DNA from: Dimorphilus gyrociliatus
Lineage: Eukaryota; Animalia; Annelida
DNA length: 64,000 nt
Reading direction: 5' to 3'
Assembly: GCA_904063045.1 (NCBI GenBank)
Contig: CAJFCJ010000006.1
Span: 1,183,771-1,247,770 of the forward strand
Position numbers and translations under genes: made by a program. A model generated the notes under the pieces. That model did no database searches. It had not been told where the DNA came from and was given only the letters and a program-made list of their open reading frames with translations. Each line of letters begins with the position of its first letter. Position 1 is the first letter of the stretch. This document shows, in pieces, positions 3,325 to 30,786 of the stretch.

Positions 3325-5831
3325 CTTTGCTAAATCTTCTCTGTCCGATTGAATATCATCATCTGAGCGAAACTTGAATAAATCAACTCCTTTTCGTTGT
3401 CTTTGCGGACTAACAACGTCATTTTCATTTCTCTTTGCTCCTGGACCAGGACCCATGCTCGGACAGCTTCCTGGTCCAGATAGAACACCAACTGGTATTC
3501 CTGTGGCTAACATTCGACATCTTTGCATTTCAATTCGAGGAGCTGCTGCTTGCACATCTCGTACTCTCTTATCGCTCCATAATCTCTCAGCAGCAGCTGA
3601 TGCTCTGGGCCTATTAAAAGATGATAAAGAATATAGAGAAACATATAAAAGTGATTTAAGGCTTATAAAATAGATTAATCAATATGCTAAAGTGCACCAA
3701 TAGAAAAATTGCAATTACTGGCGAACGATATATATTGAAACAGAGAATTATAGAGGCAGCTGGAGAGTGAAAAAATCATTTAAAAAGTAAACAAACCATA
3801 ATCTCGATAAAATATTTTCGTTGTCAACGTATTCCGTCCACATGCAAGCTTCCCCTCCAATCAACAATGATATGTTTTTTATGTTCATATCATCGATTAC
3901 AGCAGGATCTAATTGTTCACATAAATAGTATTTATCCCAATCAACACCAGTATTTATATAGTCCAAATACCAGCAAGTCGAATAAATTGCTCTCAGACCA
4001 GAATTTGTTACCCTTTCAATATCAGTAGCATCGCCCATCCAAATCTCAATAATTGTATCCGGATGAATTTTAAGACCATTATCAAATACTTCTTGCCAGA
4101 CCACATAGCTACTCCCGGTTGCTCGTTTACTCCCTAGGTCATTAATAATATCAAATAGTCTGCAGAGTCATTAAAATATGATTAAAAGGTATTTAAACAA
4201 TAAGTTAACAATTTACTTCTTTTCATAAATTCCTAACAATTGACGAGGATTAGTTATATTATTTCTCTTCATAAAATTGCTGATTTGGGGGTTGAAACTC
4301 CTTTTCAAATGATAATTATACAGTTAAGTTATAATTAATTGATTTATTTAAAATAATCCTTACCAGCAATCGAAAGGCACTTCGTCTCCACCTAAGTGAA
4401 TATATTTATCTTTAAAAACTGTTAACACTTCGGTGAAAAAGTTCCTTAGAAAGTTGTATGTGCCTCGAAGTATGGGATTAATTGGTCCGAACATCTCAGT
4501 TAGTTCATTAGTATATCTGCAATTAATGCAACGAAAATATACTGATTACAGTAACCGTATAGTAAGACAAAATAAAAAACCTACAAGTCATAGCAAGGGG
4601 TTAAAAGAAAATCTTGGCCCAAACCCCAGCTCCATGTATGGCCTGGCGTATCAAATTCCGGTATAACCCGGATTCCTCTCAATCTTGCTTCTTCTAGAAT
4701 TTCAGCCACGTCTGCTGGGCTATAAATATGGTGTTTAGAGTAAGCGCCCATTCTTGTCAGATTTGGATAATTCTTTGAGTAGAAGGGAAAGCTTTGATCG
4801 TCTACAATGTGCCAATGAAATACATTCATTTTATTCTGAGCCATCGCTTCAAGATTCATTATAATTGTCTCTTTTGTTAAAAAGTGTCGTGACGTATCGA
4901 GCAGAATGCCTCGATGAGGGAAACGAGGAAAATCGTTTATAAGTGTTCGATGAATACGATAAATATTATCAGATGATCTATAAACCAATTGACTAAAAGT
5001 TTCCAATCCCTTTAATGCTCCCCAAACCTCCCTTGCAATTATAGACGCTCCAAAACGCCTAACTTCCAGATCATAAGCCTCGTCCATTGCAAGCGAAGGC
5101 CATTTCGAACAAGGTTTTAAAACTGTAACATTTAATTGACGTAATTCTTCATCAACCTTGTCATTCAAATTTTGACGTTCATAACCATCGCTTTGAACTG
5201 AACCATGACCAAACATATTTTTCCTAATTCTTCTGAAAGCGAATCTTAGTATATCGCAGGTCTCACCAGCAGCGTGAATTGTAAATGAATCAGGCTAAAT
5301 GAACACATTATATAAACAAATGACTTTTCCTAATATGGAAAATATATCAAATCAATATACCTGAATAAAAAACTCTTGTTCAAACGTATCGTATTGTTGA
5401 GGGAGGGGCCAAGGACTACCCTGTGCTGGATTTGGTCGCAATCTTAAAGGAAATCTTGGATCCGCCGACAATTTTAAAGCATAAGAACGAGATTCTTCAA
5501 ACCAGATCACGTCCTTCTTATGTGCATTCAAAGGCCTTGGAGGTAATGTTGGTCTCCTATGACGCCGTCTCTTCTTTTTTCTGCGCCGATTTTCTCCATC
5601 AGAATTAAGTGGCTTTCTAAAACTGGGCTTAACTCTTAAATTGTCATGGTCTACTGAGTATAACTGATCTATTGAAATAATACAAGTATAATAAATAATA
5701 TAAACTTTTCCAATGTATCATTTACCATCTATTGTAAGTAGATCCTTTGCGCCATTACCTTCAGTATATGTGTATAAGACATTGGTCAATAGAAAAATTG
5801 CGGTTAAAATAAAGATGTTGATTTTCGTCAT
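3325..5831 (-). CDS. HEXB: Beta-hexosaminidase (GH20), HEXA/HEXB-like; C-terminus probably continues to 2664
   Basis: Signal peptide [15 protein letters not shown], then [48 protein letters not shown], catalytic [19 protein letters not shown] and [12 protein letters not shown], in a multi-exon GT-AG structure. The YLD motif is beta-like. Confidence 0.92.
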
Positions 5832-6321: not shown

Positions 6322-8088
6322 ATGGCGGACAACAGGGAGTCTTTCTTGGTCGATTTATCCTATGCAGAAAATGTAATTTTCAATAATCTATGGAAGCAAA
6401 AACAAAATAATAATTTCTGTGATGTTATTATCAAAGTCTTTAATCATACTGAAAGCGCTCATGGCAATCTACTGGCAGCTACTTGCATCTACTTTAAAGA
6501 TTTCTTTTCTGAGGCTGATCTCTCACTATTCGCTCCCTCGAGCCCGCAAATTTTACAAATTCATTCAGATTCTTGGGACGTAGAAAAGTCTCTACAGTAT
6601 GAGGAGGGTCTTGCATCATTAGTAGAATTTTTATATAGAGGTCAATTACTGATTAGTTCAAAAAATGTTGGAATCGTTTCAGAGTTAGCTGGAATTCTCG
6701 AATTGAAACATATTGTAGACTTTTGTAGGAGCTTTGAATCTAATGAGCAACATCCTCAAAGATGTATTTGTAAGGGAAACAATCTTTTTGATACTATCAC
6801 AAAAACGGTTGATGCTGCAACTGATACAAATGATGAAAACGGTTTGCCTTTAAAGTCTGTTGTTGAGTTGGGAGTTGTACCAGCAAGAAGAAAGAGAGGC
6901 AGGCCAAGGAAAGGAGAGGAAGTAAATCCAAAACTTGGAGTAGGTCGAGACGATGAATCAGATAAAGATTTTAAAATAAACGATAATCGCATCGACTGCG
7001 ATCAAATTGGCACAAGAAGAAGCTCTAGACGCCATAAACCAACTATGAAATCAAGTAGTGAAGAAGAAGTTAATATTAAAGAAGAACCCGTCCTAAGATA
7101 TAGAAGTGAGGCAGCAGAAATCAGTATTGAAGAGATTGACGATCCATCATTAAGAAAAATCAAATATCAATGCGAAGAATGCTCATTTGTGTGCGAGAAA
7201 AGATATGATATGGATGAGCATATGCGGCTTCATATTATCGACACAAATAAGTGCCCATTTTGCTTCGCTGACTTTTCATCTGTTGATGAAGTAAAACAAC
7301 ATTTAGCAGACAATCATAAAGGCCCTGATAGATTCCAGTGCCGCGAATGTTCTACTTGTTTCCCTACAATTAGACGATTACAATTGCACTTGCCTAAACA
7401 CTCATCTAATCGCCCATTCGCCTGTGAAATTTGCAATTCAGCATTTAAGTGGAAGCATCAGCTAAAAGTTCACTATAAAGTTCATAGCGGTGACAAACCT
7501 CATTTATGCGATGTTTGCGGCTACGCAACAGCTTATCCCGCCCAACTAAGAGCTCACTGTCTAGTTCATTCTGGTAAAACATTAAGGTGTCCAGTTCAAG
7601 ATTGTAATTTTCAGACAATAAAAAAACAAAATTTAAGTGGACACATGAAAACCCACTCAAAAGAAAAGCCATACATTTGTGATAGTTGTGGACAATCGTT
7701 TTCCTTACAAAAGAATCTCAAGCGACACATGTACGTGCATACAAACGAAAGACCCTATTTTTGCTCGATTAAAGACTGCGATTTCTCTTGTACAAGAGCA
7801 GATAAATTGAAAGAACATGAATTTAGAATACATCGTATTGGAAAAGCTCCAAATCCAAGACCAAAAATATCTGAATTGGTCGCGAAGGACAATATTACGA
7901 AAACGACTGTAAAGGATCTCGATTCAGTTGTTGCACCACTTACATGCGTTCCCGAAGGAAGCGTTATTCATGTATTCGATCGGGATAACGTACAAGATAC
8001 TCCAGTAGTTTATAGGGTAGAGGAGGAAAGTATGAATCATGCTTCTACTTCAAAAGAAGAGCATGAAGTCATGTTTGATAATCTTTAA
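6322..8088 (+). CDS. Intronless BTB/POZ, AT-hook, 8x C2H2 zinc-finger protein (ZBTB family)
   Basis: 588-aa ORF with N-terminal BTB (FCDVIIKV...AHGNLLAATCIYF), AT-hook RKRGRPRK, eight C2H2 fingers and TGEKP-like linkers (SGDKP, SKEKP, TNERP). Confidence 0.93.
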   Translation: MADNRESFLVDLSYAENVIFNNLWKQKQNNNFCDVIIKVFNHTESAHGNLLAATCIYFKDFFSEADLSLFAPSSPQILQIHSDSWDVEKSLQYEEGLASLVEFLYRGQLLISSKNVGIVSELAGILELKHIVDFCRSFESNEQHPQRCICKGNNLFDTITKTVDAATDTNDENGLPLKSVVELGVVPARRKRGRPRKGEEVNPKLGVGRDDESDKDFKINDNRIDCDQIGTRRSSRRHKPTMKSSSEEEVNIKEEPVLRYRSEAAEISIEEIDDPSLRKIKYQCEECSFVCEKRYDMDEHMRLHIIDTNKCPFCFADFSSVDEVKQHLADNHKGPDRFQCRECSTCFPTIRRLQLHLPKHSSNRPFACEICNSAFKWKHQLKVHYKVHSGDKPHLCDVCGYATAYPAQLRAHCLVHSGKTLRCPVQDCNFQTIKKQNLSGHMKTHSKEKPYICDSCGQSFSLQKNLKRHMYVHTNERPYFCSIKDCDFSCTRADKLKEHEFRIHRIGKAPNPRPKISELVAKDNITKTTVKDLDSVVAPLTCVPEGSVIHVFDRDNVQDTPVVYRVEEESMNHASTSKEEHEVMFDNL

Positions 8089-8369: not shown

Positions 8370-11300
8370 TTATGTATATTCAAGACTATCTGATAGAACC
8401 CATTGAAGAGTACCACAATCACGGCCTCCAATGGTAAATACGTATTGGTCGTTGGAAGAAAATTCTATAGCCCTTATTGACTCTGAATAGGGTCTCCTTT
8501 CGTCAAAATTCGCTTTTTTAGATGAGCACGGATATTTGTATAATCGCAATGAACCGTCAGAATTTCCAGTTATAAGTAGCTTCTTATCATTGCTCGTGTT
8601 AGCTGCGCTAACATTAACATCAGGCATGAGCTTTTTCCAAGCTCCTATGACTCTTGCGCCTATTGTACACCTGTGCTTCACCCATTCATTCTCAACTATA
8701 GATTGGGGATCTACCGAGAGCATTTGATCAGTATCCCAAAATATAACTTCAAAGTCCTTAGATTCTGTTTGAATATATCTACTATTTGTTGACCAATCTA
8801 AATTAAACACGGCCGCCTCATGGCCGTCTAGAATTCCCTTTCTAGCCCTCCTTCTATAAACGACTGCATCGTCTAAAACGTCGAATACATATACACTTGC
8901 ATTATGGCAAGCTAAAGCCAAACGATTTCCATCCGGTGAAAAAGCCATGGAATCAAGATGATCATGCGACACTTGAAAGGAGGATAAATGTTCACCAGAA
9001 TCGGTACTTAATATTATTAACCGGCCTTGCCCCGTTCCTACGGATAACACTCGGCCAGTTGGATCGATTGCCAAGGAGGAGCAAGGAAACTCAACATGGA
9101 CTTTCCATATCATTTTTTTATCATCAGCAGACCATTTGCAAATAAAAGAATCTTGACCAGCGGTAAAGAAAGATAACTCTGAGGGGCTTGACACTATAGA
9201 TGTAACCGGATTGTGGTGTCCGTGTAAAACAAAGGAAAGTTTATCTTGAAGAGATCCTTCAAGAAGACACGATTTAGCAGTAACCACAAATATTGCACCG
9301 TCCATTGATCCTTGTACTCTTGTAACTATACTTCTAATAGGCCCCGCTGCTTCGGGTATTAGTCGTTCTTTGACCATATTATAACCAGCCGACGAATCCC
9401 AAGCTCTGATCTCATTTCCTGCGCTCGATAGGAGTGTTCCATCAGCAGACATAAATAAGGCCGTAATTGGCTTTGGGGAATGAGCTCTTAGTAAATCTTT
9501 ACTAATTTCCTCATTAATCGAATAGACATCTGAATCATTCTTACTCCAAATCAATAAACGACCTTCGGAATCAGCAGTAATTACTTCTCCATTAGGAGAA
9601 AACGAGATAGCCGTAACATTGGAAGGAGGCGAAGCAAATTCATTACTAAATATACCACTTTCCTTATCTCTAAGCAGTCGATATGTATTTTCTTCGTCAG
9701 AGAATAATTTCCAAAAGTGAACATGTTGACGTCCATATGTAACAACGAGGCTGGGATCGTGAGGGTGAAAAATAGCTGATACAGCCGCAATCTCTCCCGA
9801 TATCTATTGGAAAAAGTAATAAAGTATAGGTAAAGACTTAGATGTATAGCTAATTTCAATGTTATCTCTTGAGAATTCTGTTCAACAAGAAACATTTCTA
9901 TAAAAAGGGGAAAGGTCTTTCTTTATAAATTTAGCTAAGGATGTGAAGAGATATTTCTCTAACGTTTCGTGACAATGAGAGAAATATCCCGCAGTTTAAA
10001 GTGTAAAGGAGAACAATTAGGGATAAAATATAGACATTAGAACAGTCCCATCGCAACATTTCATTCCCTTCCAATAACTCAGTGGGATTGCTTTATAACG
10101 CTTAAAAAAGGATGAATTAGCTTTTATGTCCGTGTTGTGATGGTGCGACATCAATTAATCTTAATTAGTATGCATGCGTGAAGATAGATTATCGCATTCC
10201 TATTTATTATGGCTACCTGTATTGTTTCTTCAACCTACCAATAGCATCTTATACTTAACTAGCAGAGTCGAGTCGTTAAAAGTCGTTAAAAGACCAATCC
10301 AGCTATCAAGCTGGTTTTTTTTTAAGGTAATGTTAAATAAGGCGAACGACAAGTGAACTTTTTAATAAGCTTACCATCGTCCTAACGAGCAATTCATTGT
10401 TCTGCCAATCCCAAATCAATAGAGTATGTTTGTCAGAAGAATCGACTATTAGAAGTAAACCGGATGACGATAATTGGAGGCTTGTTACGTTGCCCTGGAG
10501 AATACCCTCGCCGACAACGCTGTAGGTAGCCATAGATCTAGCATCCCATATCCGAACTAATGGCTCTAATGATTGACCGGAAGCAATGTAAGGTTGTAAA
10601 TTATCTGGATGCAAGGCTATACAGCATATTGGGGATGTATGTGCGGTAAAAAATCGTTGGGTATCTTTCTTTTTATCGTAAACTACAGCAATATTTGAGA
10701 CATAATAGACTAATTCTCCTGTCGAAAGGACATGAAGTGGGTTTCTTGAAAAAGCATTTAGACCATAAACCCAATCAAGTTTTAGTCTCTTAGCAGGTTT
10801 AGACAGGTCCTGTTTGTCTTTTAGACGTTTTGGGCAATAGAATTCCCGCTCTTCGCCATTTATTTCCGCTCTAATAGTTTCATATTCATAATTGTAGGGT
10901 TGTGGTGTCACTTCAGTCATTGACATTTCTACATCCTCCCAACGGTCAATGGGCGGTGACATGTGTTTTTGTTTGTTGGCTCTGAACTGCTGAAGGTAGG
11001 ACTGCTTAGGAACCATCCGAGATGCGTCATGTTCAATTTGACTAATCTCTTTCGGTATACCTTCACTTCCACAAACAATAAACGCTGTATTATGCTTAAG
11101 GTCTCTCAACAATTGAGAATAGCTTTCGACATTCCTATAAGGCGGTTCAGCCGTATACAAGGCAATTGCTGGGGGATAAGTTAAATCTACCATACTCCCC
11201 AAATCAGACAATAGTTCATTAAAGTCTTGAATAGTCTTTGGATTTAATAGAACAGTTTGTCTAGATGACCTTTTCGTGTTGCTAATAATAACTAGCTCCC

Positions 11301-11806
11301 GAGGTGTCGAATTAACACTACGAATCGAATTCGCTCTTGACGACGCCTGACTAGTTTGTATGGATCCATAATCCAATAGGTTTTGTTCGCCCTTTCGAAA
11401 TTTTGCAGGTGTTGGCCGTCTATTATTCCAGTGTCCTTCCTTTGAAAATCCATAATCAACATCTAAAAAAAATAGTTCATTAACAGATAAGAGTTATTTT
11501 TTATAGAAATAAAAATGTCGTATTATCTTTACCAATAAACTTCCTTACACTCGATACAACGAATGCTCCTCCTCTTGTAAAATCACTAATGTCTCTTACT
11601 AATTTAGCATTTGGTAATGAAAATATATATCGAACACCAGCTGTAGTTGGTATTTTATCATTTAGCCATACCAATAAAGTTTCTAAATTATTAAAATGTT
11701 TGGTGCTGACGGCAGTAGTTAGACCTTTGTAATTACAATCTCCATTTCTAAAGAATGTAGCCAGATGACCTCTTCTGAATGATGTTTGTTCGTTTCCGTT
11801 TTTCAT
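8370..11806 (-). CDS. DCX-EMAP: tandem doublecortin domains, HELP motif and WD40 (TAPE) repeats
   Basis: DCX1 FFRNGDCNYKG...GVRYIFSLP; DCX2 LVIISN...VLLNPKTIQDF; HELP PAKRLKLDWVYG; EML-type WD repeats (GHEAAVFNLDWS, LRLYKYPC). Introns about 11410-11516 and 9806-10374. Confidence 0.88.
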
Positions 11807-12612
11807 TTCCTCATTATCCTCGTAATAGCTACCAAAAATCTGAAGAGAGATAAAGAGAAACAAAAAAAAATTAGAGACGGTATTTACAGATTTTACGAGC
11901 AGAAAATCCTATTTTCTTAAAGAAAAATCAGAAGAAAAGGACTTAATCAATTGATAATTATTATTTTTTTTAAATTTCTTTTGATCTAATTGTTAAACCA
12001 GTCAGTACTTTGTTCTATTAAATCCTTTTATAATAATTGTTGTTGTTGTTTAATCAGTTGTAAATAAAATCGAAAAATTTCTGTAAACAAGACGTTTCGA
12101 TCCGATTATAAAATTCTGTTCGATAAGTTCTTCGCAACTGTTACTAGAAACGCAGAATAGGCCTTAGTTTTCGGCTTATCTAATCGATTCTTGTACGCTG
12201 CTGTCAAATTCGATTATCAGAGGCGCGTTATGGAAGGAAAATAATTAGCCCGTTACCAAGCGTCTAATATTGATCTACATAAGTGAAAAGGTTGAACGTT
12301 ATGATAACATAGGCTGTTATAGATTTATAACAAAATATTTCTATTATATGATATCATAATTTAATTAAGAGATAGGAAAATAGGCAAATAAGGAATGAAA
12401 GCGCTATAATAATTCTCATGGGTTACAGTTAGTGAATTATTCATGCAACACCTTTGGCGTGTATCGATAATCCATGTCAATTTTTTTTATCCGTTTTTAA
12501 AAAAAAACTAAATCCTTCTACCAAAGCTGTGCTGGTTGGAATGCCGACAAATGAACGGACCTCTAATAATCCGATTTATAACACTTTCAATTAAAAAGCC
12601 ATATAGCTCCCT

Positions 12613-12840
12613 TTACGTTTTATCGATCGTCTTATCCGTATTAAAAGTAAAGAGAGTGCATAGCCCTACCTCCTCAGTGTAGTCGTCTTCCTCCTCTTCA
12701 TCATCGTCCTCATCAATTGTTTGTTCATAGCCTCTAACAGGCCGCGGTAACTTTGAACGCTTTTTCAATTCATAAAGGCGTTTTTTCTTTCTAATTATTT
12801 CTGTCATTCTCTTAACTGCTGCAGGATCATCCATTTTCAT
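12613..12840 (-). CDS. Small basic/acidic ORF of unknown function
   Basis: MKMDDPAAVKRMTEIIRKKKRLYELKKR...DEDDDEEEEDD, with upstream TATAAAA and TTCCGG and a possible donor after YTEE. No family recognised. Confidence 0.35.
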   Translation of the reverse strand: MKMDDPAAVKRMTEIIRKKKRLYELKKRSKLPRPVRGYEQTIDEDDDEEEEDDYTEEVGLCTLFTFNTDKTIDKT

Positions 12841-13126
12841 ACTGCGCGACTCGATAGAGCTTTCCCACAATATATTGTTATGTTTTTATACCGGAAATTG
12901 ATCTTTGTCAACGTTGCGCCTTCAGTAGAAATATATAATGAGCTAACTTCGACTCAATTGTACTAGAATAAAAGATTGTATAATGTAAAAGAATTCAACT
13001 TTATTGGACGGAATAATTCATTTTCGATCAAAATTGATAGAGACTCGTCTTATATATCGGTGCAAAACAAAAAAAACCAAAAAGCTAATACTGAATAAAA
13101 AATTAAAACATAAAATTGAAAAGAAG

Positions 13127-16100
13127 TCAATCTATTTCCGGATTTTGTCTAGAGCTAAAAGAAGACGGCTTCACGGAGAGCGTATTTTCCATGCTATCGC
13201 TTCTCGCACTTTTTCCTACAATTTTTTCGGCCTTATGGCACTTTGTATGACGATCTGAATACTTTTTTTTCAAGACGTTTGAATCGCTAGCTCTTCTTCC
13301 CATAACTGTTTCTAACTGACTCCGACTTGTAGGAGCACTATACGATTTTATGACGAGTAGATTGTTGCCATTTCCTCTGCTGAACGATTGACAACCTGAA
13401 GGAAATGAGTGTTTTGACGATTCGGGTGTTGTTTTCGGTCGTCCCATATAAAAAGAGGGGGCTACCAATTGTCGACCAGAAACTTCAAGGCGTTCCAGAG
13501 TTTTGCTTACGAGTTTCATATCTTTTTGTAAGTCTAATTTAAAGGAAGTATAGGAAGACGGTCTAGTACTTTCTCCAAGGAGTTTTACAGATGAGCCACT
13601 ACTTGTGGTTGACAATACTTCAACCTCAATATTCTCTTTCTCACTATCAGCAGTACTAGATTTGACAGACGAACAATTAGCACTAGACATAATTTCAACT
13701 TTTATATTCTCTTTTTCTAAATCGTAATCATCATCTTCAATTTGACTGGCTTCAGTGCAAGAACCTGAGCTTATTAAATCTATTTCTTCATCATTATCTT
13801 GTTCGACAGATTTACTTTCTGTTTGCTTCAAACTCTCAGGTAGAGTAGAGTCGGATAGCGTATTAGTTTCTTTTTTCACTTGTATCGGCGGTAATGGTTT
13901 CAAGTTCAACTGATCTAAACAGTTGTTTGAAATTTCTGTGGAGGCTTTCTTTTTTGATTTATTCTTTTTCTTTAATTGGCCATCTTGTATCTTGAAGATA
14001 GATTTCTTTGTCGACTTATAAGTTTCGTTCCTATTCTTCCATTTATGGTCAGGACAATGGCTGAATAAGATATAAAGATTAAAACTATAGATGGCGTTAG
14101 GCAAAAAGCCTAAAATAAACTATAGAATAAAAATTGTATTACCTACGGCATATTCCCATCAGCCAGGTGTCTATGCTCTTAAAAATGTACCTAGATTAAG
14201 ACAACAGTGGCTTGGTGTAAGAATCTTATTATTTTAGCATTAAACATGCTCACGTACTTCATTGAGTGATATGAAGTGCTTTTAAATCTGTAATCGTCGA
14301 AAATACCAACGTGGCCTTTGTGCCAACGTGATCCGATAGTTTTACGTCCCTCTCCCAACCAAATTTCAACATGGGTCAAATTATGCCTTTGCTTTTTCAC
14401 TGTAATCGGAAAACGAGATCGATTCTAAATATAGTTACTAATTAGGAATTCGTTAAAAGCGAATGCGCGACGAATGCCAATTAAGTGCGTTACGAGCATC
14501 AAAGCCACCTTTACGTCTAGGCGCTTTTAACATTTACATAGAAAAATACAAAAAATTCCAGACGAGGGCGTATTCATTCAACAAAGGTACTTTTGTAACA
14601 CCAGTCCCGAAGGTCGCATTCCGTTCATGAAGCCAGTGCACATAAAAGTATATATTTAAATAAAAAGTATATATATATAGTGAATGTATATATAAATATC
14701 TATATTTTTTTAAGTATATTTATAAATATATATATAAATATACGCTTTGAAATGCCTCTTAATCGTTTGCGCCACTCCCCTGATGTACTGTATAGGTGAA
14801 TGAATAATATATGCATAATACATAAATGGGGTATTTGGCTTTTATACGCAAATTGATAAAAAAGCTTAGCTGTTTATGAATTTATGTGTCTTTCACACAT
14901 TCAATAAAAAAGAGTAAATTAACTACGTTTATACTTACTCTTTTCGTTATAGTAAACTGCCGATATGAAAACTAGATCGCCCGGCTTCATATCCTCCTCC
15001 CGTTCAACCGTTATCGGTAAAGTGTCGTGCTGATAAGCTTGATTCCATGACCCAATTCGAAAACCGAATTCATCTTCGAGATCTCGCATTATTCTACGTA
15101 CAAGACCACAGCAGTCGAGAAACAGTTTCGAATGGTATTCGGAATCTTTGAAGGTGTAAATTACGTAATTTTTTAAGTTGTTTGAGGCTTGGGGAAAGTC
15201 AACGATTAACCTACTAACCGTTCTCCGTCCAGTAACGCCTTGCATAAGGCGTCCCGAAATATTTCCTAGCTTGTTCAATCAGTCTATACCTGAGCGCCAT
15301 CATCCGCTCAGGGTTTGCTAACGCCCTCAGAGTTGCCTCACTACGTTTTTTCCTATTCTTTTTTCTGCACTTTCTCATATCATTCTGGGAAGAAAAAAGT
15401 CTAGGGGTAACAATGGGCTCTATTATTCAGCTTGCATTGGGCTACACATTCTTTCTCGTTTCGTCAATATTTGATGTTTGTGCGACAGGTATGACAAAAA
15501 TATGTAACGAAATTCCGCCCCTCCCACAAAACTCTTTTTACTGTTTTATTGCTAATTCTTAAGAAAGGGACGGTCCAATAGGTTCTCTTTGTTACAATTT
15601 AAAAGTATGAATCGGGTACAACGTAAGCAATATTTTCTAAAATGCTGTTTTATCACAAGCCTACACTAGGAAAAGACAACAAACAATTGTTTATTTTGGA
15701 GCGTAAATATAGGCTAAAACTGTAATTGAATTTTTAAGTTGTACGATTTTATTTATAGAGCGCACGTAAACGGATACTAAATTAGAGACTCTCTTTTCAA
15801 GACTAGACGGTAATCGATATATAGGTAAAAATCTCTCGGTGAGCAGATGGATGTGTTTACATTCCGTAGTTATGGCGACTACATCAACAAGCGTCTCATG
15901 ACGTCATAATCTATATCCTTTCTCGTTCATTTTCCGGCTTTGAACTTTGAACCTCGTTGTTGAATGATAACTTATTTTCTTTATCTAAGCATATACCTGC
16001 TTTTTAGTTAAAAAAGTAACCCCAAGCAAGAGTATAAACGACGATCATTAATCCTTCATAAGTTCGATTAGTGAAGTAAAGAGTAACGTAAACAGTGCTT

Positions 16101-17883
16101 TATACAGTATTTTTGCTTGTAGGAAGTTTCTTAACAATTGGTTATTTTTTTCGTCATGCCTGTCTACTTAAGTGTATTATAAAAACGTCGACAAGTAATT
16201 AAACGATAGGCTTTTATTATTTATCAAATACATAACATTAGAGATGATTTATGGCTGCCGCCTGACAATAAAAAACCTCCCATCCTTCAATATATCAGAC
16301 TATTGATAAAAATGGAACAGTAATAGTCATAAAAAGCAAAACATAGGGTATACTAATGCAAGATTCCCTCCAAAACCGGTCTAGACACGTTTATAACGGT
16401 AATCCCATCGAAATCGCCTCAAACTACAGTATACAGTAAGTGTCAATACACACAGGGCGCCGTTGAAATGCTATTACTCTGGTTTAATTACAACTGTAAT
16501 CCCCCAACACAAGACCGATAAAGGAACTCTGCTGGACTAAAAAACTAGCAGACTTTTCGGCACGCGTTAAGCCCGTTCAAGTCCGGTTCAAAGGCGAACC
16601 GCCTTATTTCTTTATCACAATCACGCTCGCGCGTTGTTTACTATGTGAATAGGTCACGAGTGCCCAGTCATCTCACGTCTAACTGAAAAAGCTGGCAAAA
16701 AAAATGATACTATGATATTAACATAAAAGAAAGCGAATGATTTGTGGATGATGCGATGACGTCGAATAGCACTGCCACGTGTATCCAAGAACAACAGAAG
16801 CGTCGTCCCGAGCAACAAACGCTTTGTTTATACTCGTATCCTTGACAACCCGGGGCGTGCGGCTGGCCAGTATAGAATGTAGCTGCAGTTCAAGCAGACA
16901 AGATGAAATCTTTCGTTGATGTTTCGGACTCGGCAGACATCTTTACCTGACAGTATTAAGGCATTGTAGTCTCCTAATGCTGCTAGGTAAGATGCCAGCA
17001 GGGACCGCAATTCCAAAATCTTCTTCAAGTTCTTCATATCACAACTAGACGACATCCAAAAAAATCATAAGAATGATTAAAGGAAAGTATAAAGCTATGC
17101 CAATATCCGTACACCTGGTCAAATGGCGCCTAACTCACTAGGTCGCGGGTTCTAGTACAATAAGCAGGTGCATGCTGGTTGGCCATCACTACTAGCACGT
17201 GACGGGACGTCCAGTAGCAGAGGGGCGAAGCCGATGGGTTTCTTTCATTGAATATGTATTGTTTTCAAACGGCAACATGTCTAGATACGCCCTCAAAACC
17301 GTCATGGCGACCGACGTGTGTTCGCATTTATATTGCATTGAGTTATTGTTAAAGCTTAGGAATTTTTCATCATGGGCGTAATACTACAGGTGAACTCTAA
17401 ATATAGCCAGCCGCCGCCTTAACAGGTTAAGTAAGTCTCAAGCAGGATGTCACGTGATAGTCAAAAATGCTAACGCGTTGTGGCATAAAAAAACTTAGCG
17501 CAGTTAGAAAAAAATCTATTAACGTGCCAAATAGAATGGGGTCAGTGAAGTCGCGACAGCTGACGCCAACCAGCAGCGGCAGCGAGCGTCGACAATGAAC
17601 AACATATGGCGCAAGCATCAACAAATGATAAATGCCTTTTCTCTATGTAAAATATTTGAAGCGTAAAAAGCTGACATTTGCGCCATCTACTTTTAATACG
17701 TACAACAAATATTCGTTGTCCCTTTTCCCCACCCCGAAAAAAAAAATAGGAATATATAGCTACCTCTCGTTTTTTCTTGTACTTTTGGAAGGCGTCTTGA
17801 AGAGTTTCGTTTTTCATTTCGTCGCTTAAACTAACAACAAACGAATCGGACACACTCCGTTTCTGTTCATTTCGGCATTCCAT
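13127..17883 (-). CDS. Eukaryotic NlpC/P60 (papain-like amidase fold) domain protein with long Ser-rich tail
   Basis: Exon 17883-17764 (40 codons, TLQDAFQKYKKKRE) splices in phase 0 to 15384 (NDMRK...ARKYFGTPY). Then LDCCGLVRR (catalytic Cys), MKPGDLVF, THVEIW (catalytic His), FKSIDTWLMGIC and SHCPDHKW, followed by a low-complexity tail to TGA at 13127. Confidence 0.8.
16936..16994 (-). ncRNA. mir-8: Pre-miRNA mir-8 (miR-8/miR-200 family), intronic and sense to its host
   Basis: Minus strand 16958-16936 reads UAAUACUGUCAGGUAAAGAUGUC, the conserved protostome miR-8-3p. 16994-16973 reads CAUCUUACCUAGCAGCAUUAGG (miR-8-5p type). The loop is 14 nt and an imperfect basal stem extends to about 16923/17007. 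Confidence 0.97.
17680..17691 (-). promoter_or_regulatory. CTCF-type motif
   Basis: Reverse complement AGTAGATGGCGC in the mir-8 host intron. Confidence 0.5.
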
Positions 17884-19167: not shown

Positions 19168-19710
19168 GAATTAAGCGTTAAATTTGTTATTGAAAACAAG
19201 TAGCCCCCTAGTTGGCTTGTAAAAGAGAAATACGTGGGAAAGAGAGATAGAATAAGAGAGTTTACAAAGAATTCATGAGGAAATGCCTGCTAATTAAATA
19301 AGCGTGAATATTTTCCGATATTTCATGTTATTCTCAAACTCCCTTTAGTACTGCTATAATAAATAGTCTTTTTTTAGACTTGTTTTATTATGTGCCCTTA
19401 TAATGTTGGATATTCTTCTATTAAGTGTATCGATAGTGAACAGATTTGACATTCAAAGATAGATTTCAATATTATTATTCTGTCTATCTCTGCCTATCTT
19501 TACCTACTTGTTTCATAGTGTACAAACGATAGATGGCGTTAAAATTAACATCTTTCGTCCAGAGAAATCTTTTTCAGCTGTTCATATCGGATATAGAGGT
19601 CGCGTAAATCAGTTTGTAAAAAGAGTAAAAAAGCCAATAAAAAACAAAAAGATTATATTGAAAGGAAGATCTAAATTCTATATAATGATTTATGAGAAGA
19701 AAAGGGGATT

Positions 19711-21091
19711 ATGAAGAAACCTTATTCTTATTTGAATTTCGTACTAATTTGGACGGTTTCAGAAGCTTTTAAAGAGATAAATTACGATGAAAAATCAGTA
19801 AATCGCGTAAATTATTCGTTCGAAAATCTACCCAAAATAAATTCAATAGAAATTGAAGATTTTGCAAAAAGTTGTGGGGTAAATCTTAATTGGTTTATAA
19901 GTAATGAAACTAAAAACCTTCATATTTGCGATCCTGAGAATATATTAGACGACAAAGATGGTATATAATTACAACTTTTTTTTATAAAATATTAATAAAT
20001 ATATATTTAAAAATGCAAATATACTATAGAGTGTACTGTATATCTATATGGTATATATAGTGTACTTGTACATACGATTTATATGTTTATGTATATGGTA
20101 GATTTACATTTTTAAATACTGTACATATAAAAAGCAGATAAATACATTAATAAGTAAATAAATAAATATCTATATATAAGTATTTATTTACTTATATATA
20201 TATATATATATACAGTATACTGCATATATGTATATAATTTCTATTACCTCAGTCAAAGGAATTAAGACGTAATTAATTTATTAAAAGCTATTATTCTCAA
20301 CGAAGAAGCGCAAGAACTTTGTTACGTTGATAACTGTCCGTGCAAAAACAAAGGATCATTTATTGTATCGGACGAAGAAAATGACAAATGCTCGTTTTTG
20401 CACGTTTACCGGAAGAAATCTTATCGATTCAAATGTCGTAGTTTTTACCTGAGGCTGTTTATAATACCTGAACTTAAATTTTCACAACAGTAAGTCTTTT
20501 ATTTCCTAAAAAAAAACCGAAGGAGGATATTCTATATACCCTATTTAATGGTTAACATTTAGATATTTAGCAGTAAGGAAAAAGATCTTTTTCCGGTTCA
20601 ATCGATGTTTATACCCTTTTAACGAGTTTCTGTTAATTTTCAGAAATAAAAGAACAAGGCAGCAAATGCAGATTGAAATCGAAAATCTAGCGAATAATTT
20701 ATCGAAAGAATGGGAAAAGAGTCAAAGGTGTGCGGCAAACATCGATATAGTATTAAGCCATTACGACAAGAAGCTCTATATTACAGTTGGAAAGAATATA
20801 ACTATCTTTGCACGATGTATGAATTATATATATAGTCAAGTACTCCAACACTTTAGGAAAGGTGACTATGGAAGGGGTTTAAGTCAATTAATTCAGCGTT
20901 TTAGACAAGCTTTGAAGGAGAAGGGAAAAGACATTTGCGGCAAAATAACAAAAAGAGACCATGTTGTAGTTTTGTTTGTCTCTGTGGGGTTGACTCTATC
21001 TTTCTGCTGTTGTTTTAGTAATATTTTCTATATTAAGAGGTATCTTGATACTAATTATAAGAGTTTGCCAAAAACTGTTAAAACGCAATAA
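19711..21091 (+). CDS. MOLO-1-like TPM-domain single-pass membrane protein
   Basis: Signal peptide, SCG...HICDPENIL (CDPDxIL motif), LANNLSKEW...C..NIDIV, HFRKGDYGRGL and a C-terminal TM VVVLFVSVGLTLSFCCCF. Exons 19711-19960, 20267-about 20489 and about 20645-21091. Confidence 0.72.
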
Positions 21092-24500: not shown

Positions 24501-25484
24501 GTACAGGAGACGCTTCGACTCTAAATCGGAAGATGAACGAGAAAGTTTGTTTCTTTATTTTCTTAATTGCGGTTAAAAGCAGTGAAACACCTGCGTCTCG
24601 CTTGCGGGCTTAGTTCCGGTCGAATTTATACTTCGACAAGCCCTAATTTTAACTCTTTTCCCAAGTAAATAAACACGTAAATATCTAATTTGATAAATAA
24701 TATATAAACTTTTTCATTCATGAATTCTTAATTTATTCATACAGGAATAGTGAACAGCACAGGAGAAGCTCTTATTATCCCTAATGTAACACGGTATTGC
24801 GATGATATCTACGAGTGTGTTGCGGATAATGGTGTGTCGGCAGTTAGTCGCCAAATGCGAGTTACTGTCGAATTCGAACCCGAAATTACCTTACCAGCCA
24901 GCCGATTCGGGCAAATTGCGGGCAAGACTACAATGTTAGAATGCCGGATAACGGCACGGCCACAAGGAGAGACGGTATGGAGGAAAAATGGCAAAATAGT
25001 AAATCAAAAAACTGATAAGCGTTACCAATTGCATGCTTACGAGTATGAGCAAGCGCCCCATACAATAAGTGTCTTTTTGACTATTAAAAATGTCAAGAAA
25101 TCAGACTCTGGGGTATACGAATGCTTCTCAACGAATCCTCTTGGTAATGATTCGGAAAAAATGGTTTTCACGGGTAAATTCTATGCTCTATTATTATTAT
25201 AATATTAAATCCGTAGAAAGTCAGTAGACAGAACCGATAAATAATTAATGAATAAATCTAATTCAATATCTGGATTTAATCGGTTTTTTTTTACTCTCCT
25301 TTAAGTCAAACCAAAACCGAATGAAACCTTACCAAAGAGATCGTCTCCAGAGGAAGTGGACCTGGAAGAGAAGCAATCGTTAGACTTTCATACTCGGCCG
25401 GAGCGAACGGGAGCTTCCTCATCGTTTCAAATGTCTTCTCGCCTATTCGCCTTAACCTTTACAGTTCTTGCCGGAACGCTATAA
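21504..25484 (+). CDS. Lachesin/IgLON-like GPI-anchored 3-Ig adhesion protein with acidic Tyr-rich N-terminal stalk
   Basis: Signal exon MKRMRAFVIAVGFLFSF, two acidic exons, then Ig1 (ETAILPCRVKN...WNLQL...DRGTYKC), Ig2 (VEEGATVILNCNVTGVPYPTVSW...DIYECVADNGV) and Ig3 (LECRITARP...DSGVYECFSTNPLG). Hydrophobic GPI-type C-terminus SRLFALTFTVLAGTL. All junctions phase-consistent. Confidence 0.88.
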
Positions 25485-26342
25485 AGCAAAAGAGGAAGGA
25501 GTTTTAAATGAATGAATTAGACTAATTTTTTGGTAAAGAACAATATAAAAAGAAAAAAAAAGGAAGAACGGATAAGATTTATATCCCATTAAAAAGAACA
25601 CCGAAGAGGATGAAGATAGAATGAAATTACGAACTATAATCCTTCACTTTCTCTACCCTTCCTCTTCCGCCTCCTATACCCATTCCCAATCTATATTCTT
25701 ACTCCTAATCCTCTTCTTCTTGTTCTCTTAAAATATTTAACTAATGTTTTTTTTTTAAACAAAAAAAAAGGACACAACTGTCTAATGTATAAATGCGATC
25801 CCCTTTTTTACTGTTCGCCCATTTCGCTTTACTTATTTATCTAAAAAGACTTTTTTTTATTTCCAAAAGTGTTACAAGACCTCAGCCATTTTCTCTCCTA
25901 TAAATAATTTACACTTTTCGCTTCTTCCCGTATGCGTGTCATGTATATGTGGCCAGATCTTCTTGACGAGTAGTTTGTAACAGATTTACGTCTGTTCCTT
26001 TTATATTAAAAGACAAAAGACTCTCGTGAAGAGAAAAAAGAAATTAAAAAAATTAGACAAAAATAAGAATTGAAAGAAACAAAAGAAGGAAGAAGAAAAC
26101 AAAATATACGTTTCTAATTGGGAAGAAGAAAAATCTAATTTTATATCTCTTCTTACTTTGTATTTATGGCTAAAATATAAAATAAATATGCCACATATTC
26201 TATTTACAATTTACAGTGAGTACTGTATAAAGGTATACATAAAAATTAATATAGTGAATTATACAATCTACGGACTAGACGTTATATAATGCGCACATGC
26301 TAAATATACTGCATATATGCGCAGTAACATATATACAGTATA

Positions 26343-28999: not shown

Positions 29000-29776
29000 T
29001 CACTTCTGATTAGATAAGAGGAAGAACAATTCTTGCTTGGAGAATACGGAGCTCTTTTCCTTATCATATAATCTGAAGAAGATATTTGCTTGTTCATCCA
29101 CCTCCTTCGGACTGGGTGTCTACGATAGGGAGGGGGAAAATATGCAAATTAGATATAAAAAACAAAAAAGGTCAACGACGCATACGAGCCCTATTTTCTG
29201 CATAATATCCCTAAGGAACGAGTTTAATTCCCGCCCATCCAGTTGTTGACTGGCGTTCTGATCGCGAAAATTGATCGAAATTAGACGCCAATTCGAATCC
29301 GACTACCTACTTTATCGTATTTAGTGAAAACTTGATCAAACTCTTCTCTTCCGAGCTTTTCTCGAATTTCGAACGGTGTGCTAGATGTATCGGTAAAGAT
29401 GATTCTGTGAATATGGGAGAAAAAGAACAGAAAAGAAAAAAGAGAAAAAAGGTGATAAATGTTGTTGTATTCCAACCAACTGGGCAAATTCGTATAATTC
29501 AATTTTCTTATCCCTATTCGTGTCGAACATTTTTAGGAAGAGTCTGGTTGCAGCTTGCACAGCTTCGGGAGAGTTTTGCTTGTCGTCCTTCTTCCGAATA
29601 AGATCGCTTGCGAATTGTTGAAGTTCATCACCTTCAATATATCCGCTTCTATCAATATCGTAATGCATCCATATTCTTAGGAAATCCACTACGTGTATTT
29701 TCTTGCCTTTTTTTAACATCTGAACCAAATTATCCTCTTCTCTATTCGAATTTTCTTTGCAGTAATTACAGCCCAT
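29000..29776 (-). CDS. Calbindin/calretinin/secretagogin-like EF-hand protein (about 4 EF hands) with MGC N-terminus
   Basis: FLRIWMHYDIDRSGYIEGDEL, FDTNRDKKIELYE, YDK|NASQQLDGREL and YDKEKSSVFSKQE across four exons; stop TGA at 29002-29000. Confidence 0.85.
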
Positions 29777-30786
29777 ATTATATATATACGCTATTATATA
29801 CATATACTTATATATATACTTGAAAATAAACAGTATATATATATATAAATATGTATATAAAATATACACACTATATGTATGTTCTATACATCAGTATAAC
29901 AATAAAATTTACATTTTCCCTTAGATGTTCGTCCTACGACGGCTGATCGTCGAAAGGCGCCGTTCTGTATGGCGCCGGACTCGATTAATATTCATAGGCC
30001 TAATTTATATATACATAGTATAAATATGTTTATATCCCGTAATTTCTTAATAATTATTAAACATTTCTTATCATATTTAAGCATTACCCAACAATAAACG
30101 ATACGCTTTTATAAAGAGATATATTGCACCTATTTTAAAGATATCTTATCAGTAGAATATGCGTAGTTTGTAGAATTTTGTAGTGCTACTGTAAAAACAC
30201 AACCGTATTTATTCCTGTATCAACGAGGGTTGTGCACACTATTACTATTCACTATCTATTTTATTCCAACTTTTTTTTACTACTCTATTACTTTTCCCTT
30301 TCACTTTTTATTCTTCTCATCTTGTACTTATTCTTTTTCTATATAGCCTAATCTATCCTTCTCCTATTCTCTTCCTTTCTTTCGTTTTCTTTTGTTTCTT
30401 CTTTTTTCTTCTCCTTTTACTGTATTATTTCTCTTCTCTTCAATCTATTTCTCAACTAGTTTTTCTCTCGCTTTTCTCTTCCTATCATTTCTAACCCTTA
30501 ACCCCTTTTTCCTGCAGCTAAAAGAAAAAAAAGCTACCACTCTTTCGCGTCACTTCCAGATAGTCTACTAGGCCTAGTCATTCCGCCTTTTTAGCCGGTT
30601 CCCTCCCTCTTATACCAGCCTGTCGTCAACTTTTCATTTATTTGCCTGACTATTTGGTTTTCTTTCTGTTTTATTCATCACTTTTTTTTAGTTCCCCTAC
30701 CCCTTCCCCCTCACCCACTCATATTTCTAATGCTTTCTTTCTTATTCTCTTTGCTGAGATAGTATGAATCAATTTCCGGTTCATAG

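What the first reader, a model, noticed from the sequence alone, without database searches (positions are those of the whole stretch)
13127..17883. mir-8 hosted in an NlpC/P60 gene: possible deep miR-8/miR-200-TTLL10 linkage with loss of the ligase domain
Seen: mir-8 lies sense in the unusually long (2.38 kb) first coding intron of the NlpC/P60 gene. Known: the vertebrate miR-200b/200a/429 cluster (miR-8 family) sits next to the ciliary glycylase gene TTLL10. From memory and unverified: this NlpC/P60 type occurs at the N-terminus of invertebrate proteins annotated TTLL10-like. No TTL domain follows here, but FSRGNGNNLLVIKSY (about 13340-13385) faintly resembles the start of the TTLL10 ligase region as I recall it (FYIGGSNGATIISSY). 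Inference: an ancestral bilaterian mir-8/TTLL10 locus in which the host was retained and the ligase decayed or moved.
Basis: partly seen in the sequence, partly recalled or inferred. Interest (0 to 1): 0.75.

Follow-up and report, generated by a model that had tools for sequence, protein, structure and literature searches.

The report
mir-8 in split TTLL10 gene
The microRNA mir-8 sits in the first intron of what is really the front half of the ancient tubulin-glycylase gene TTLL10; in this small worm that gene has split in two, the microRNA staying with a stand-alone peptidase-like half while the ligase half is a separate gene elsewhere.

Summary
A mir-8 hairpin (Rfam 55 bits, the only copy in the genome) lies sense in the 2,379-nt first coding intron of a six-exon minus-strand gene (13127-17883). 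RNA contigs show all five introns spliced.

The gene encodes an NlpC/P60-type domain plus a low-complexity tail, with no ligase domain. That domain is 70-79% identical to the N-terminal domain of proteins that carry a TTLL10-type ligase (annelid, nemertean, molluscs, starfish, lamprey, shark, salamander, lizard, snake).

In Owenia, Tubulanus, Mya, Acanthaster and Saccoglossus, mir-8 lies sense in the same intron, after a homologous first exon. The deep mir-8/TTLL10 linkage is therefore real, but it is already published (Mol Biol Evol 2025, msaf036, Table 2: MIR-8~ttll10, Bilateria).

The ligase is not lost. A TTLL10-type ligase (52% identical to Owenia's, at most 38%, and only over shorter stretches, for the other TTL loci) is a separate gene on contig C10, so this is a gene fission. 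A possible relic of the ligase start in the host's last exon is suggestive only.

The peptidase domain of TTLL10 appears in no paper I could find. It could be the unidentified tubulin deglycylase, but that is speculative. The scan had not reported this on other DNA.

The parts
16933..16999 (-). mir-8 precursor hairpin; the 3p mature arm is at 16936-16958
   Evidence: Rfam RF00241, 55 bits, E 2e-9. Fold -33.1 kcal/mol, z -3.3. Aligns and co-folds with 6 orthologous hairpins. Only copy in the genome.
17764..17883 (-). Coding exon 1 (40 aa, ends ...LQDAFQKYKKKRE, phase 0)
   Evidence: Sequence reading. The donor at 17764 is used in RNA contigs X1 and X2. The peptide and the intron position align with exon 1 of Owenia, Tubulanus, Acanthaster, Mya, Saccoglossus and Pogona.
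15385..17763 (-). Intron 1 (2,379 nt), which hosts mir-8 in the sense orientation
   Evidence: Joint 15384|17764 in an RNA contig of X1. The homologous intron holds mir-8 in five other species.
15601..17044 (-). Alternative exon inside intron 1. Its acceptor is about 45 nt upstream of the hairpin, and it carries the unprocessed hairpin joined to exon 1.
   Evidence: A 1,484-nt X2 contig (a close relative, about 97% identical) joins 17764 to about 17044 and runs to 15601 (tables 5, 5c, 8). The window has ctag|TTGTG at 17045/17044. X2 is labelled 'RNA?' by the tool, so its RNA nature is inferred from its spliced joints.
15219..15384 (-). Coding exon 2 (helical lead-in of the NlpC/P60 domain)
   Evidence: Joints 15384|17764 and 15145|15219; alignment.
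14939..15145 (-). Coding exon 3: NlpC/P60 core with the catalytic-type Cys (LDCCG)
   Evidence: Pfam PF00877, 19.7 bits. phmmer finds 436 hits at up to 79% identity. D-C-C is invariant in 58 sequences. Sole copy in the genome.
14258..14399 (-). Coding exon 4: carries the catalytic-type His (THVEIWLG)
   Evidence: Joint 14399|14939. H and E are invariant. Aligns with HVGIYLG of 3npf.
14143..14190 (-). Coding exon 5 (16 codons). The 67-nt intron before it is absent from orthologues.
   Evidence: Joints 14060|14143 and 14190|14258. Exons 4 and 5 form one exon in Tubulanus, Acanthaster and Mya.
13127..14060 (-). Terminal exon 6: end of the domain (CPDHKW), a roughly 300-aa low-complexity tail, and the stop codon at 13127-13129. 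It contains no TTL domain.
   Evidence: No Pfam family. An RNA contig covers 13801-14060. The next gene's ORF (12613-12870) begins about 260 nt downstream of the stop; its ATG is read at about 12840.
13355..13462 (-). Possible relic of the TTL-domain start: APSFYMG, then 22 aa, then RGNGNNLL(VIKSY). Orthologues have P.FYIGG.NG..LV here.
   Evidence: Orthologue alignment. The ordered pair of half-motifs occurred in 0 of 300,000 shuffles (post hoc). The profile score is not significant.

Best explanation
The window holds the 5' half of the ancestral bilaterian TTLL10 locus. In the ancestor, one gene encoded an N-terminal NlpC/P60-type papain-fold domain, a disordered linker and a C-terminal TTLL10 ATP-grasp ligase, and mir-8 lay sense in its first coding intron.

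In this worm the gene has undergone fission. The locus here keeps the promoter, exon 1, the mir-8 intron and the NlpC/P60 exons, and ends in a low-complexity tail. The ligase is a separate, intact gene on contig C10.

mir-8 is made from the host's transcription unit. Exon 1 is spliced either to exon 2, giving the mRNA with the hairpin in the excised intron, or to an acceptor about 45 nt upstream of the hairpin, giving an isoform that carries the hairpin. Keeping this arrangement explains why intron 1 stays long in an otherwise compact gene.

Shown: the hairpin, the splicing, orthology of the domain and of the intron position in six other species, and a separate TTLL10-type ligase. Inferred: that the fission went through a duplication followed by complementary loss, that mature miR-8 is processed from these transcripts, and that the NlpC/P60 protein is an active enzyme.
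For: - **Hairpin:**
- **Exon model and splicing:**. All five introns are spliced in RNA contigs, and exon 1 is also joined to about 17044 and runs through the hairpin.
- **Domain orthology:** exon 3 has 436 homologues at up to 79% identity. 18 of 37 long ones have a TTL domain C-terminal to it. They are named TTLL10 in four species.
- **Fused ORFs in metagenomes:** fused proteins also occur on short marine-metagenome contigs (P0148 and others). I read these as single uninterrupted ORFs, which is inferred from how such proteins are usually called and not shown, so the fusion is probably not an annotation artefact.
- **mir-8 in the first coding intron, sense:** Owenia (61.6 bits), Tubulanus (64.2), Acanthaster (58.5), and Mya and Saccoglossus (mature sequence plus co-folding hairpin). 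The exon 1 peptide and intron position are conserved.
- **Separate ligase:** C10:1537516-1538685 is 52% identical to the Owenia ligase (E 8e-122), against at most 38%, and only over shorter stretches, for the other TTL loci. It is 46-48% identical to named vertebrate TTLL10, and its KP..GKGI, KFDLR and IEANVNP motifs are intact.
- **Not a processed retrocopy:** the C10 gene keeps the ancestral intron after ...GGxNGxxL.
- **No second NlpC/P60 copy** of this type in the genome.
- **Published precedent** for the linkage: PMC11848845, Table 2.
Against: - Several species have NlpC/P60-only gene models: Mya, Argopecten, Mytilus, Batillaria, Saccoglossus and amphioxus. In Mya that gene is nested within the range of a separate 865-aa TTL gene on the same strand. 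The ancestral locus may therefore already have made separate products, and 'fission' may overstate the change.
- The 5' end and start codon of the C10 ligase gene are not resolved, and its expression was not tested.
- C6 and C10 are contigs, so their chromosomal relation is unknown.
- Mature miR-8 reads were not examined.
- X2 is only presumed to be RNA, and it comes from a relative about 3% divergent.
- The relic motif is not significant by profile search.
Confidence: 0.82

Rival explanations
1. The ligase simply decayed in situ and the worm has no TTLL10 ligase. This is the 'loss' branch of the first reader's inference.
For: The host gene has no TTL domain. Its tail may hold a degenerate TTL start.
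Against: An intact TTLL10-type ligase ORF of 711 aa with no stops is on C10. It is 52% identical to Owenia's and 46-48% to vertebrate TTLL10, and its catalytic motifs are present.
Confidence: 0.04
2. There was no duplication. The ancestral locus already produced an NlpC/P60-only isoform ending in the large linker exon as well as a ligase-containing isoform. In this worm the ligase exons were translocated away by a rearrangement, leaving the short isoform as the only product.
For: NlpC/P60-only models with a very large terminal exon exist in Mya (418-aa last exon) and other species. In Mya this gene lies within the range of a same-strand TTL gene. The window's terminal exon corresponds in position to the linker exon of the fused genes.
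Against: If the FYMG...GNGNNLL relic is real, both loci carry the start of the ligase domain, which a simple break cannot give. The isoform structure in other species was not checked with RNA.
Confidence: 0.3
3. NlpC/P60 and TTLL10 were always two adjacent genes, and the 'fused' proteins are read-through annotation artefacts. On this view mir-8's true ancestral host is the NlpC/P60 gene and not TTLL10.
For: Long introns (9-36 kb) separate the NlpC/P60 exons from the TTL exons in Owenia and Tubulanus. Several species have split models.
Against: Fused proteins of 676-824 aa occur on short metagenome contigs of unicellular-eukaryote type, most simply read as continuous ORFs. Fused models were produced independently in more than 10 animals, including RefSeq isoform sets.
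Confidence: 0.08
4. The separation is an assembly or contamination artefact.
For: The genome is in 349 contigs.
Against: The host ORF ends at an in-frame stop, and the next gene's first ORF (provisionally the DCX-EML gene) begins about 260 nt downstream on the same contig. The gene has spliceosomal introns confirmed by RNA. The C10 gene has its own upstream exon.
Confidence: 0.02

Closest known systems
MIR-8~ttll10 intragenic linkage (Mol Biol Evol 2025, msaf036, PMC11848845, Table 2)
   Same: [quoted passage not shown] The six extra species examined here agree with it.
   Different: Here the host has lost its ligase half to another locus, so the microRNA is hosted by an NlpC/P60-only gene. 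In its main text the paper names the pair only in a table. As far as the held text shows (its supplements are not held), it does not say which intron, and does not mention the N-terminal domain or any fission.
Human/vertebrate miR-200b/200a/429 cluster upstream of TTLL10 (established knowledge, from memory for human)
   Same: Same microRNA family, same neighbouring gene, same strand. In the king cobra a mir-8-family hairpin lies 9.9 kb upstream of a TTLL10 that still has the NlpC/P60 domain.
   Different: In mammals the cluster is treated as intergenic with its own promoter. Here and in five invertebrates the hairpin is intronic, after a conserved first coding exon that Pogona TTLL10 also has.
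Bacterial NlpC/P60 D,L-endopeptidases (RipB, MepS/Spr, dipeptidyl-peptidase VI, P60)
   Same: Same fold (Foldseek probability 1.0). The Cys in DC[SC]G and the His in HV.I.LG align with the bacterial enzymes and are invariant in 58 family members.
   Different: Cytoplasmic animal or protist protein without a signal peptide or cell-wall binding modules. Only about 20% identical. The canonical third triad position (about 12 residues after the His) is Ile/Gly here. There is an extra helical lead-in and a C-terminal CPxHxW segment. The substrate cannot be peptidoglycan.
Prokaryotic peptidase plus ATP-grasp peptide-ligase pairs (Zhang and Aravind 2012, PMC3495828)
   Same: A papain-like or transglutaminase-like peptidase is genomically coupled to an ATP-grasp ligase comparable to TTL enzymes, and is predicted to reverse the ligated peptide tag.
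   Different: That paper concerns TGL-type domains in bacterial operons and in ciliary proteins such as CC2D2A and CEP76. It does not concern an NlpC/P60 domain fused to TTLL10.

Membership tests
mir-8/mir-200 microRNA family (RF00241) | The precursor scores above Rfam's gathering threshold with the family covariance model | tested here: met
   55 bits against 47, covering the full model 1-72.
mir-8/mir-200 microRNA family (RF00241) | 3p arm with seed AAUACUG and a stable hairpin | tested here: met
   TAATACTGTCAGGTAAAGATGTC at 16936-16958. Its first 23 bases are identical in Owenia, Tubulanus and Mya. Fold z -3.3. Compensatory pairs in a 7-species alignment.
mir-8/mir-200 microRNA family (RF00241) | A mature ~22-nt RNA is produced | not tested
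   Only contigs of long-RNA libraries were laid. No small-RNA data were examined.
NlpC/P60 superfamily (Pfam PF00877 / clan CL0125) | Significant match to the family profile | tested here: inconclusive
   Exon 3 alone scores 19.7 bits, E 8.5e-4, below the cut-off of 23. The joined model was not searched. A profile of 58 family members hits solved NlpC/P60 enzymes 3npf and 3pvq at E 1e-4 and 6e-4.
NlpC/P60 superfamily (Pfam PF00877 / clan CL0125) | Papain-like alpha+beta fold of NlpC/P60 type | tested here: met
   Tested on the orthologue P0002:105-300 (79% identical in exon 3), not on the window protein itself. AF2 pLDDT 92. The top 50 Foldseek hits are all NlpC/P60 domains.
NlpC/P60 superfamily (Pfam PF00877 / clan CL0125) | Catalytic Cys and His conserved | tested here: met
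   LDCCG and HVEIW are present in the window and invariant in 58 sequences. They align with DCSG and HVGIY of 3npf.
NlpC/P60 superfamily (Pfam PF00877 / clan CL0125) | Third polar triad residue (His/Glu/Asn, about 12 residues after the catalytic His) | tested here: not met
   That position reads T-I-G-[AS]-R in the family consensus and in the window. Another residue may serve. The structure was not inspected at atomic level.
TTLL10 (orthologue of the polyglycylase gene) | N-terminal region, exon structure and mir-8 intron orthologous to TTLL10 genes | tested here: met
TTLL10 (orthologue of the polyglycylase gene) | TTL / ATP-grasp ligase domain (PF03133) | tested here: not met
   No TTL match in any exon of the window gene. 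The TTLL10-type ligase is at C10. The window gene is therefore the N-terminal fission product of TTLL10 and is not a TTLL10 enzyme.

The most novel reading that the evidence does not exclude
The conserved NlpC/P60 domain fused to the polyglycylase TTLL10 may be the still-unidentified eraser of tubulin (or NAP1) glycylation: a cysteine isopeptidase that trims glycines attached to the gamma-carboxyl of glutamate.

Three observations point this way. Its bacterial relatives cleave gamma-D-glutamyl bonds. Its Cys and His are invariant from protist-like sequences to reptiles. It is fused to the writer enzyme. In this worm writer and putative eraser are separate genes, and mir-8 is co-transcribed with the eraser only.
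Probability: 0.2. Interest if true: 0.9.

Novelty: new variant of a known kind. Interest (0 to 1): 0.55.

Why it matters
The deep mir-8/TTLL10 host relationship is confirmed independently in seven animals, but it is already in the literature. That part is a solid check and not a discovery.

Two things add value.

- **A natural fission.** The microRNA followed the promoter-proximal, non-ligase half of its host. Whatever keeps mir-8 in this intron for over 500 million years therefore does not need the ligase on the same transcript.
- **An undescribed domain.** The part of TTLL10 that hosts mir-8 is an NlpC/P60 peptidase-type domain with an invariant Cys-His pair, found from protist-like metagenome sequences to reptiles and also as stand-alone genes. 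I found no paper on it. Tubulin deglycylases were still described as unidentified in 2024 (PMC11244163), so a peptidase fused to the polyglycylase is a directly testable candidate. This worm's stand-alone 538-aa protein is a convenient natural construct for that test.

Tried and rejected
- **Pfam NLPC_P60 against the whole genome** found nothing, not even the window's own copy. The model is too distant, so the exon 3 protein was searched instead.
- **ESM Atlas look-alikes of exon 3** gave only generic phage or bacterial NlpC/P60, CHAP and Amidase_5 clusters. This is consistent with the fold and otherwise uninformative.
- **Profile search of the host tail with the TTL-start profile:** not significant.
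- **Lamprey locus:** no mir-8 family hairpin within the gene or 10 kb of flank. The model lacks the conserved first exon, so this says little.
- **Missing DNA:** none could be fetched for Pogona or shark TTLL10 (gene ranges over 100 kb), for a shorter Pogona isoform, or for P0002. Whether the vertebrate miR-200b cluster is intronic to the long TTLL10 isoforms therefore stays open.
- **Loose end of the X1 contig at 13097:** not found elsewhere in the window, so there is no evidence of splicing onward from the 3' UTR.
- **Literature:** no paper holds both TTLL10 and NlpC. Anantharaman and Aravind 2003 is not held, so I could not check whether they noted the fusion.
- **Joined model:** the joined 538-aa model was never sent to a database search or fold tool. 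Exons were searched by reference, an orthologue was folded instead, and the joined translation was built only inside local scripts for reading frames and one display alignment.
Full report
**Observation.** Rfam finds one family above threshold in the 64-kb window: mir-8 at 16933-16999 on the minus strand, at 55 bits against a gathering score of 47. The 3p arm reads TAATACTGTCAGGTAAAGATGTC. The hairpin folds at -33.1 kcal/mol, better than all 200 shuffles. A whole-genome scan finds no second copy.

Reading the minus strand gives a gene with coding exons 17883-17764, 15384-15219, 15145-14939, 14399-14258, 14190-14143 and 14060-13127. This is 538 codons, all with GT..AG introns (I corrected the exon 3 donor by hand from the sequence). 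Intron 1 is 2,379 nt and the others are 73, 539, 67 and 82 nt. The hairpin lies in intron 1 on the coding strand.

Contigs of a marine metatranscriptome (X1) contain all five joints, including 15384|17764.

**How mir-8 is transcribed.** In run X2, from an organism about 97% identical to the window, a 1,484-nt contig joins the exon 1 donor (17764) to about 17044. The window has an acceptor there (ctag|TTGTG). The contig continues through the hairpin to 15601.

Exon 1 is thus spliced either to exon 2 or to an alternative exon that begins about 45 nt upstream of the hairpin. This places mir-8 in the host's transcription unit.

The tool only guesses that X2 is RNA. Its spliced exon 5/4 and exon 1 joints are my reason to accept that.

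**What the protein is.** Searched exon by exon, only exon 3 touches Pfam: NLPC_P60 at 19.7 bits, below the cut-off. A phmmer search of exon 3 against 1.84 billion representatives gave 436 hits at up to 79% identity.

A 58-sequence domain alignment has invariant D-C-C, H-V-E and Arg positions. Its profile hits solved NlpC/P60 dipeptidyl-peptidases VI at E 1e-4, aligning DCSG with DCCG and HVGIYLG with HVEIWLG.

I folded the orthologue P0002:105-300 with this alignment and not the joined window model. It gives pLDDT 92, and its best 50 structural matches are all NlpC/P60 domains such as RipB, MepS, P60 and LytE. The canonical third triad position is not conserved.

**Link to TTLL10.**
- Of 37 homologues of at least 400 aa, 18 carry a Pfam TTL domain C-terminal to the NlpC/P60 domain.
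- Their sources name them TTLL10 in Ambystoma, Pogona, Ophiophagus and Biomphalaria. Unnamed or differently named fused proteins occur in Owenia, Tubulanus, Candidula, Acanthaster, a lamprey and a shark.
- Fused proteins of 676-824 aa also occur on short marine-metagenome contigs, most simply read as single ORFs. That reading argues against the fusion being an annotation artefact and suggests it predates animals.
- NlpC/P60-only models exist in Mya, Argopecten, Mytilus, Batillaria, Saccoglossus and amphioxus.

**Deep linkage of mir-8.** I fetched the genomic loci and mapped exons by tblastn. In each of five species the first coding exon is followed by a very long intron that contains a sense mir-8 hairpin:

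| Species | Exon 1 ends / exon 2 starts (locus coordinates) | mir-8 position | Evidence |
|---|---|---|---|
| Owenia | 10168 / 34479 | 19540-19608 | Rfam 61.6 bits |
| Tubulanus | 10156 / 46240 | 33764-33833 | Rfam 64.2 bits |
| Acanthaster | 10162 / 31409 | 26176-26246 | Rfam 58.5 bits |
| Mya | 10162 / 55559 | mature sequence at 25842 | |
| Saccoglossus | 10398 / 67483 | mature sequence at 52683 | |

The seven hairpins align and co-fold, with compensatory changes at the base of the stem. The exon 1 peptides end in a shared motif. The window has ...LQDAFQKYKKKRE|, and the others have ...LQ[DEK][AS]F.[KR][FY].....Q|. The intron falls at the same point, and Pogona TTLL10 has the same exon.

In the king cobra a mir-8-family hairpin (58.5 bits) lies 9.9 kb upstream of a partial TTLL10 model, on the same strand. 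In the lamprey locus none was found within reach.

The linkage is therefore real and orthologous at the level of the intron. It is also already published. Table 2 of Mol Biol Evol 2025, msaf036 lists '8~ttll10' among microRNA families born in sense introns at the base of Bilateria.

**Where the ligase went.** The window gene ends at a stop codon (13127-13129). The next ORF on the minus strand (12613-12870) begins about 260 nt downstream of the stop, with its ATG read at about 12840. I take it as the first exon of the DCX-HELP-EML gene on position alone, since it has no Pfam match. There is no room for ligase exons.

The Owenia ligase region, searched against the whole genome, hits C10:1537516-1538685 at 52% identity over 388 aa (E 8e-122). 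All other TTL loci reach at most 38% over 100 residues or fewer, or about 30% over longer stretches.

That ORF is 711 codons without stops. It is 46-48% identical to named vertebrate TTLL10 and keeps the ATP-grasp motifs.

An upstream exon encodes ...KEPTFYVGGGNGCA and is followed by an intron at the same place as in Tubulanus (residue 578) and Acanthaster (483/484). The C10 gene is therefore not a processed retrocopy. Its start codon is unresolved.

The genome has no second NlpC/P60 copy of this type.

**The relic.** The host's last exon reads APSFYMG, then 22 residues, then RGNGNNLLVIKSY (13340-13462). Orthologues and the C10 gene read P.FY[IV]GG.NG..L[VI] at the very start of the ligase domain, and the position after a roughly 200-aa linker is the same.

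A profile search is not significant. Relaxed half-motifs in that order occurred in 0 of 300,000 shuffles of the tail, but those patterns were chosen after seeing the data. If the relic is real, both loci carry the ligase start, which favours duplication followed by complementary loss over a simple break. I put this at about even odds.

**Function.** What the stand-alone NlpC/P60 protein does is not shown. Three points make an isopeptidase acting on glycylated or glutamylated substrates the most economical hypothesis:
- the Cys-His pair is invariant;
- the domain is fused to the polyglycylase;
- the bacterial relatives cleave gamma-glutamyl bonds.

Tubulin deglycylases were still described as unidentified in 2024 (PMC11244163). 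A conceptual precedent, peptidases paired with ATP-grasp ligases to reverse peptide tags, is in PMC3495828. No paper in the searchable library holds both TTLL10 and NlpC.

**Limits.** Earlier notes call it a tiny marine worm, and the genome is 77.9 Mb.

It was assembled only inside local scripts.

The statements that mammalian TTLL10 lacks the NlpC/P60 domain, and that human miR-200c/141 neighbours PTPN6, come from memory and were not tested here.

Noticed in passing
window 8370-12870 (-): The gene immediately downstream encodes doublecortin domains, a HELP motif and two EML beta-propellers (a DCX-EMAP-like microtubule-associated protein), so two microtubule-related genes sit tail to head. The ORF at 12613-12870 is taken as its first exon on position alone; it has no Pfam match.
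   Followed up: partly
window 14191-14257 (-): A 67-nt intron, confirmed by an RNA contig, splits an exon that is undivided in Tubulanus, Acanthaster and Mya. This looks like a lineage-specific intron gain in a compact genome.
   Followed up: partly
L028 43999-47894 (-), Acanthaster: The gene just downstream of starfish TTLL10 encodes SH2-SH2-tyrosine phosphatase (PTPN6/11-like). From memory, human miR-200c/141 lies next to PTPN6. If so, the two human miR-200 clusters may be the two halves of one ancestral TTLL10-mir-8-PTPN neighbourhood after genome duplication.
   Followed up: no
L042, Mya arenaria: The 651-aa NlpC/P60-only gene is annotated inside the range of a same-strand 865-aa TTL gene that runs over both ends of the 82-kb locus. 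This may be a complex locus with alternative products.
   Followed up: no
P0002 (ENA ERZ25072999, 1.4-Mb contig): A 553-aa NlpC/P60-only homologue, 79% identical in exon 3, is called as a 1,662-nt gene in an unidentified eukaryote, so it appears intronless. It includes the exon 1 motif with no intron after it, which leaves no room for an intronic mir-8.
   Followed up: partly
P0148, P0149, P0107, P0121, P0128, P0071: NlpC/P60-TTL fused proteins of 676-824 aa occur on short marine or other metagenome contigs, including a TARA sample and a EukProt entry. They point to unicellular eukaryotes with the same architecture.
   Followed up: partly
window 14372-14787: X2 and X3 contigs at depth 41 cover part of intron 3 (14400-14938). 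This could be intron retention or unspliced precursor.
   Followed up: no
window 6322-8088 (+), 4581-5216 (-), 20666-21091 (+), 24750-25202 (+), 29381-29869 (-): Other ORFs in the window, from Pfam hits: a BTB plus C2H2 zinc-finger protein, a GH20 hexosaminidase exon, a TPM-domain ORF, an Ig I-set exon and an EF-hand protein.
   Followed up: no
G000:C6:327558-328106 and C6:915580-916311: Two other TTL-family loci lie on the same contig as the window. Neither appeared among the matches to the TTLL10 ligase query, so neither looks TTLL10-type.
   Followed up: partly
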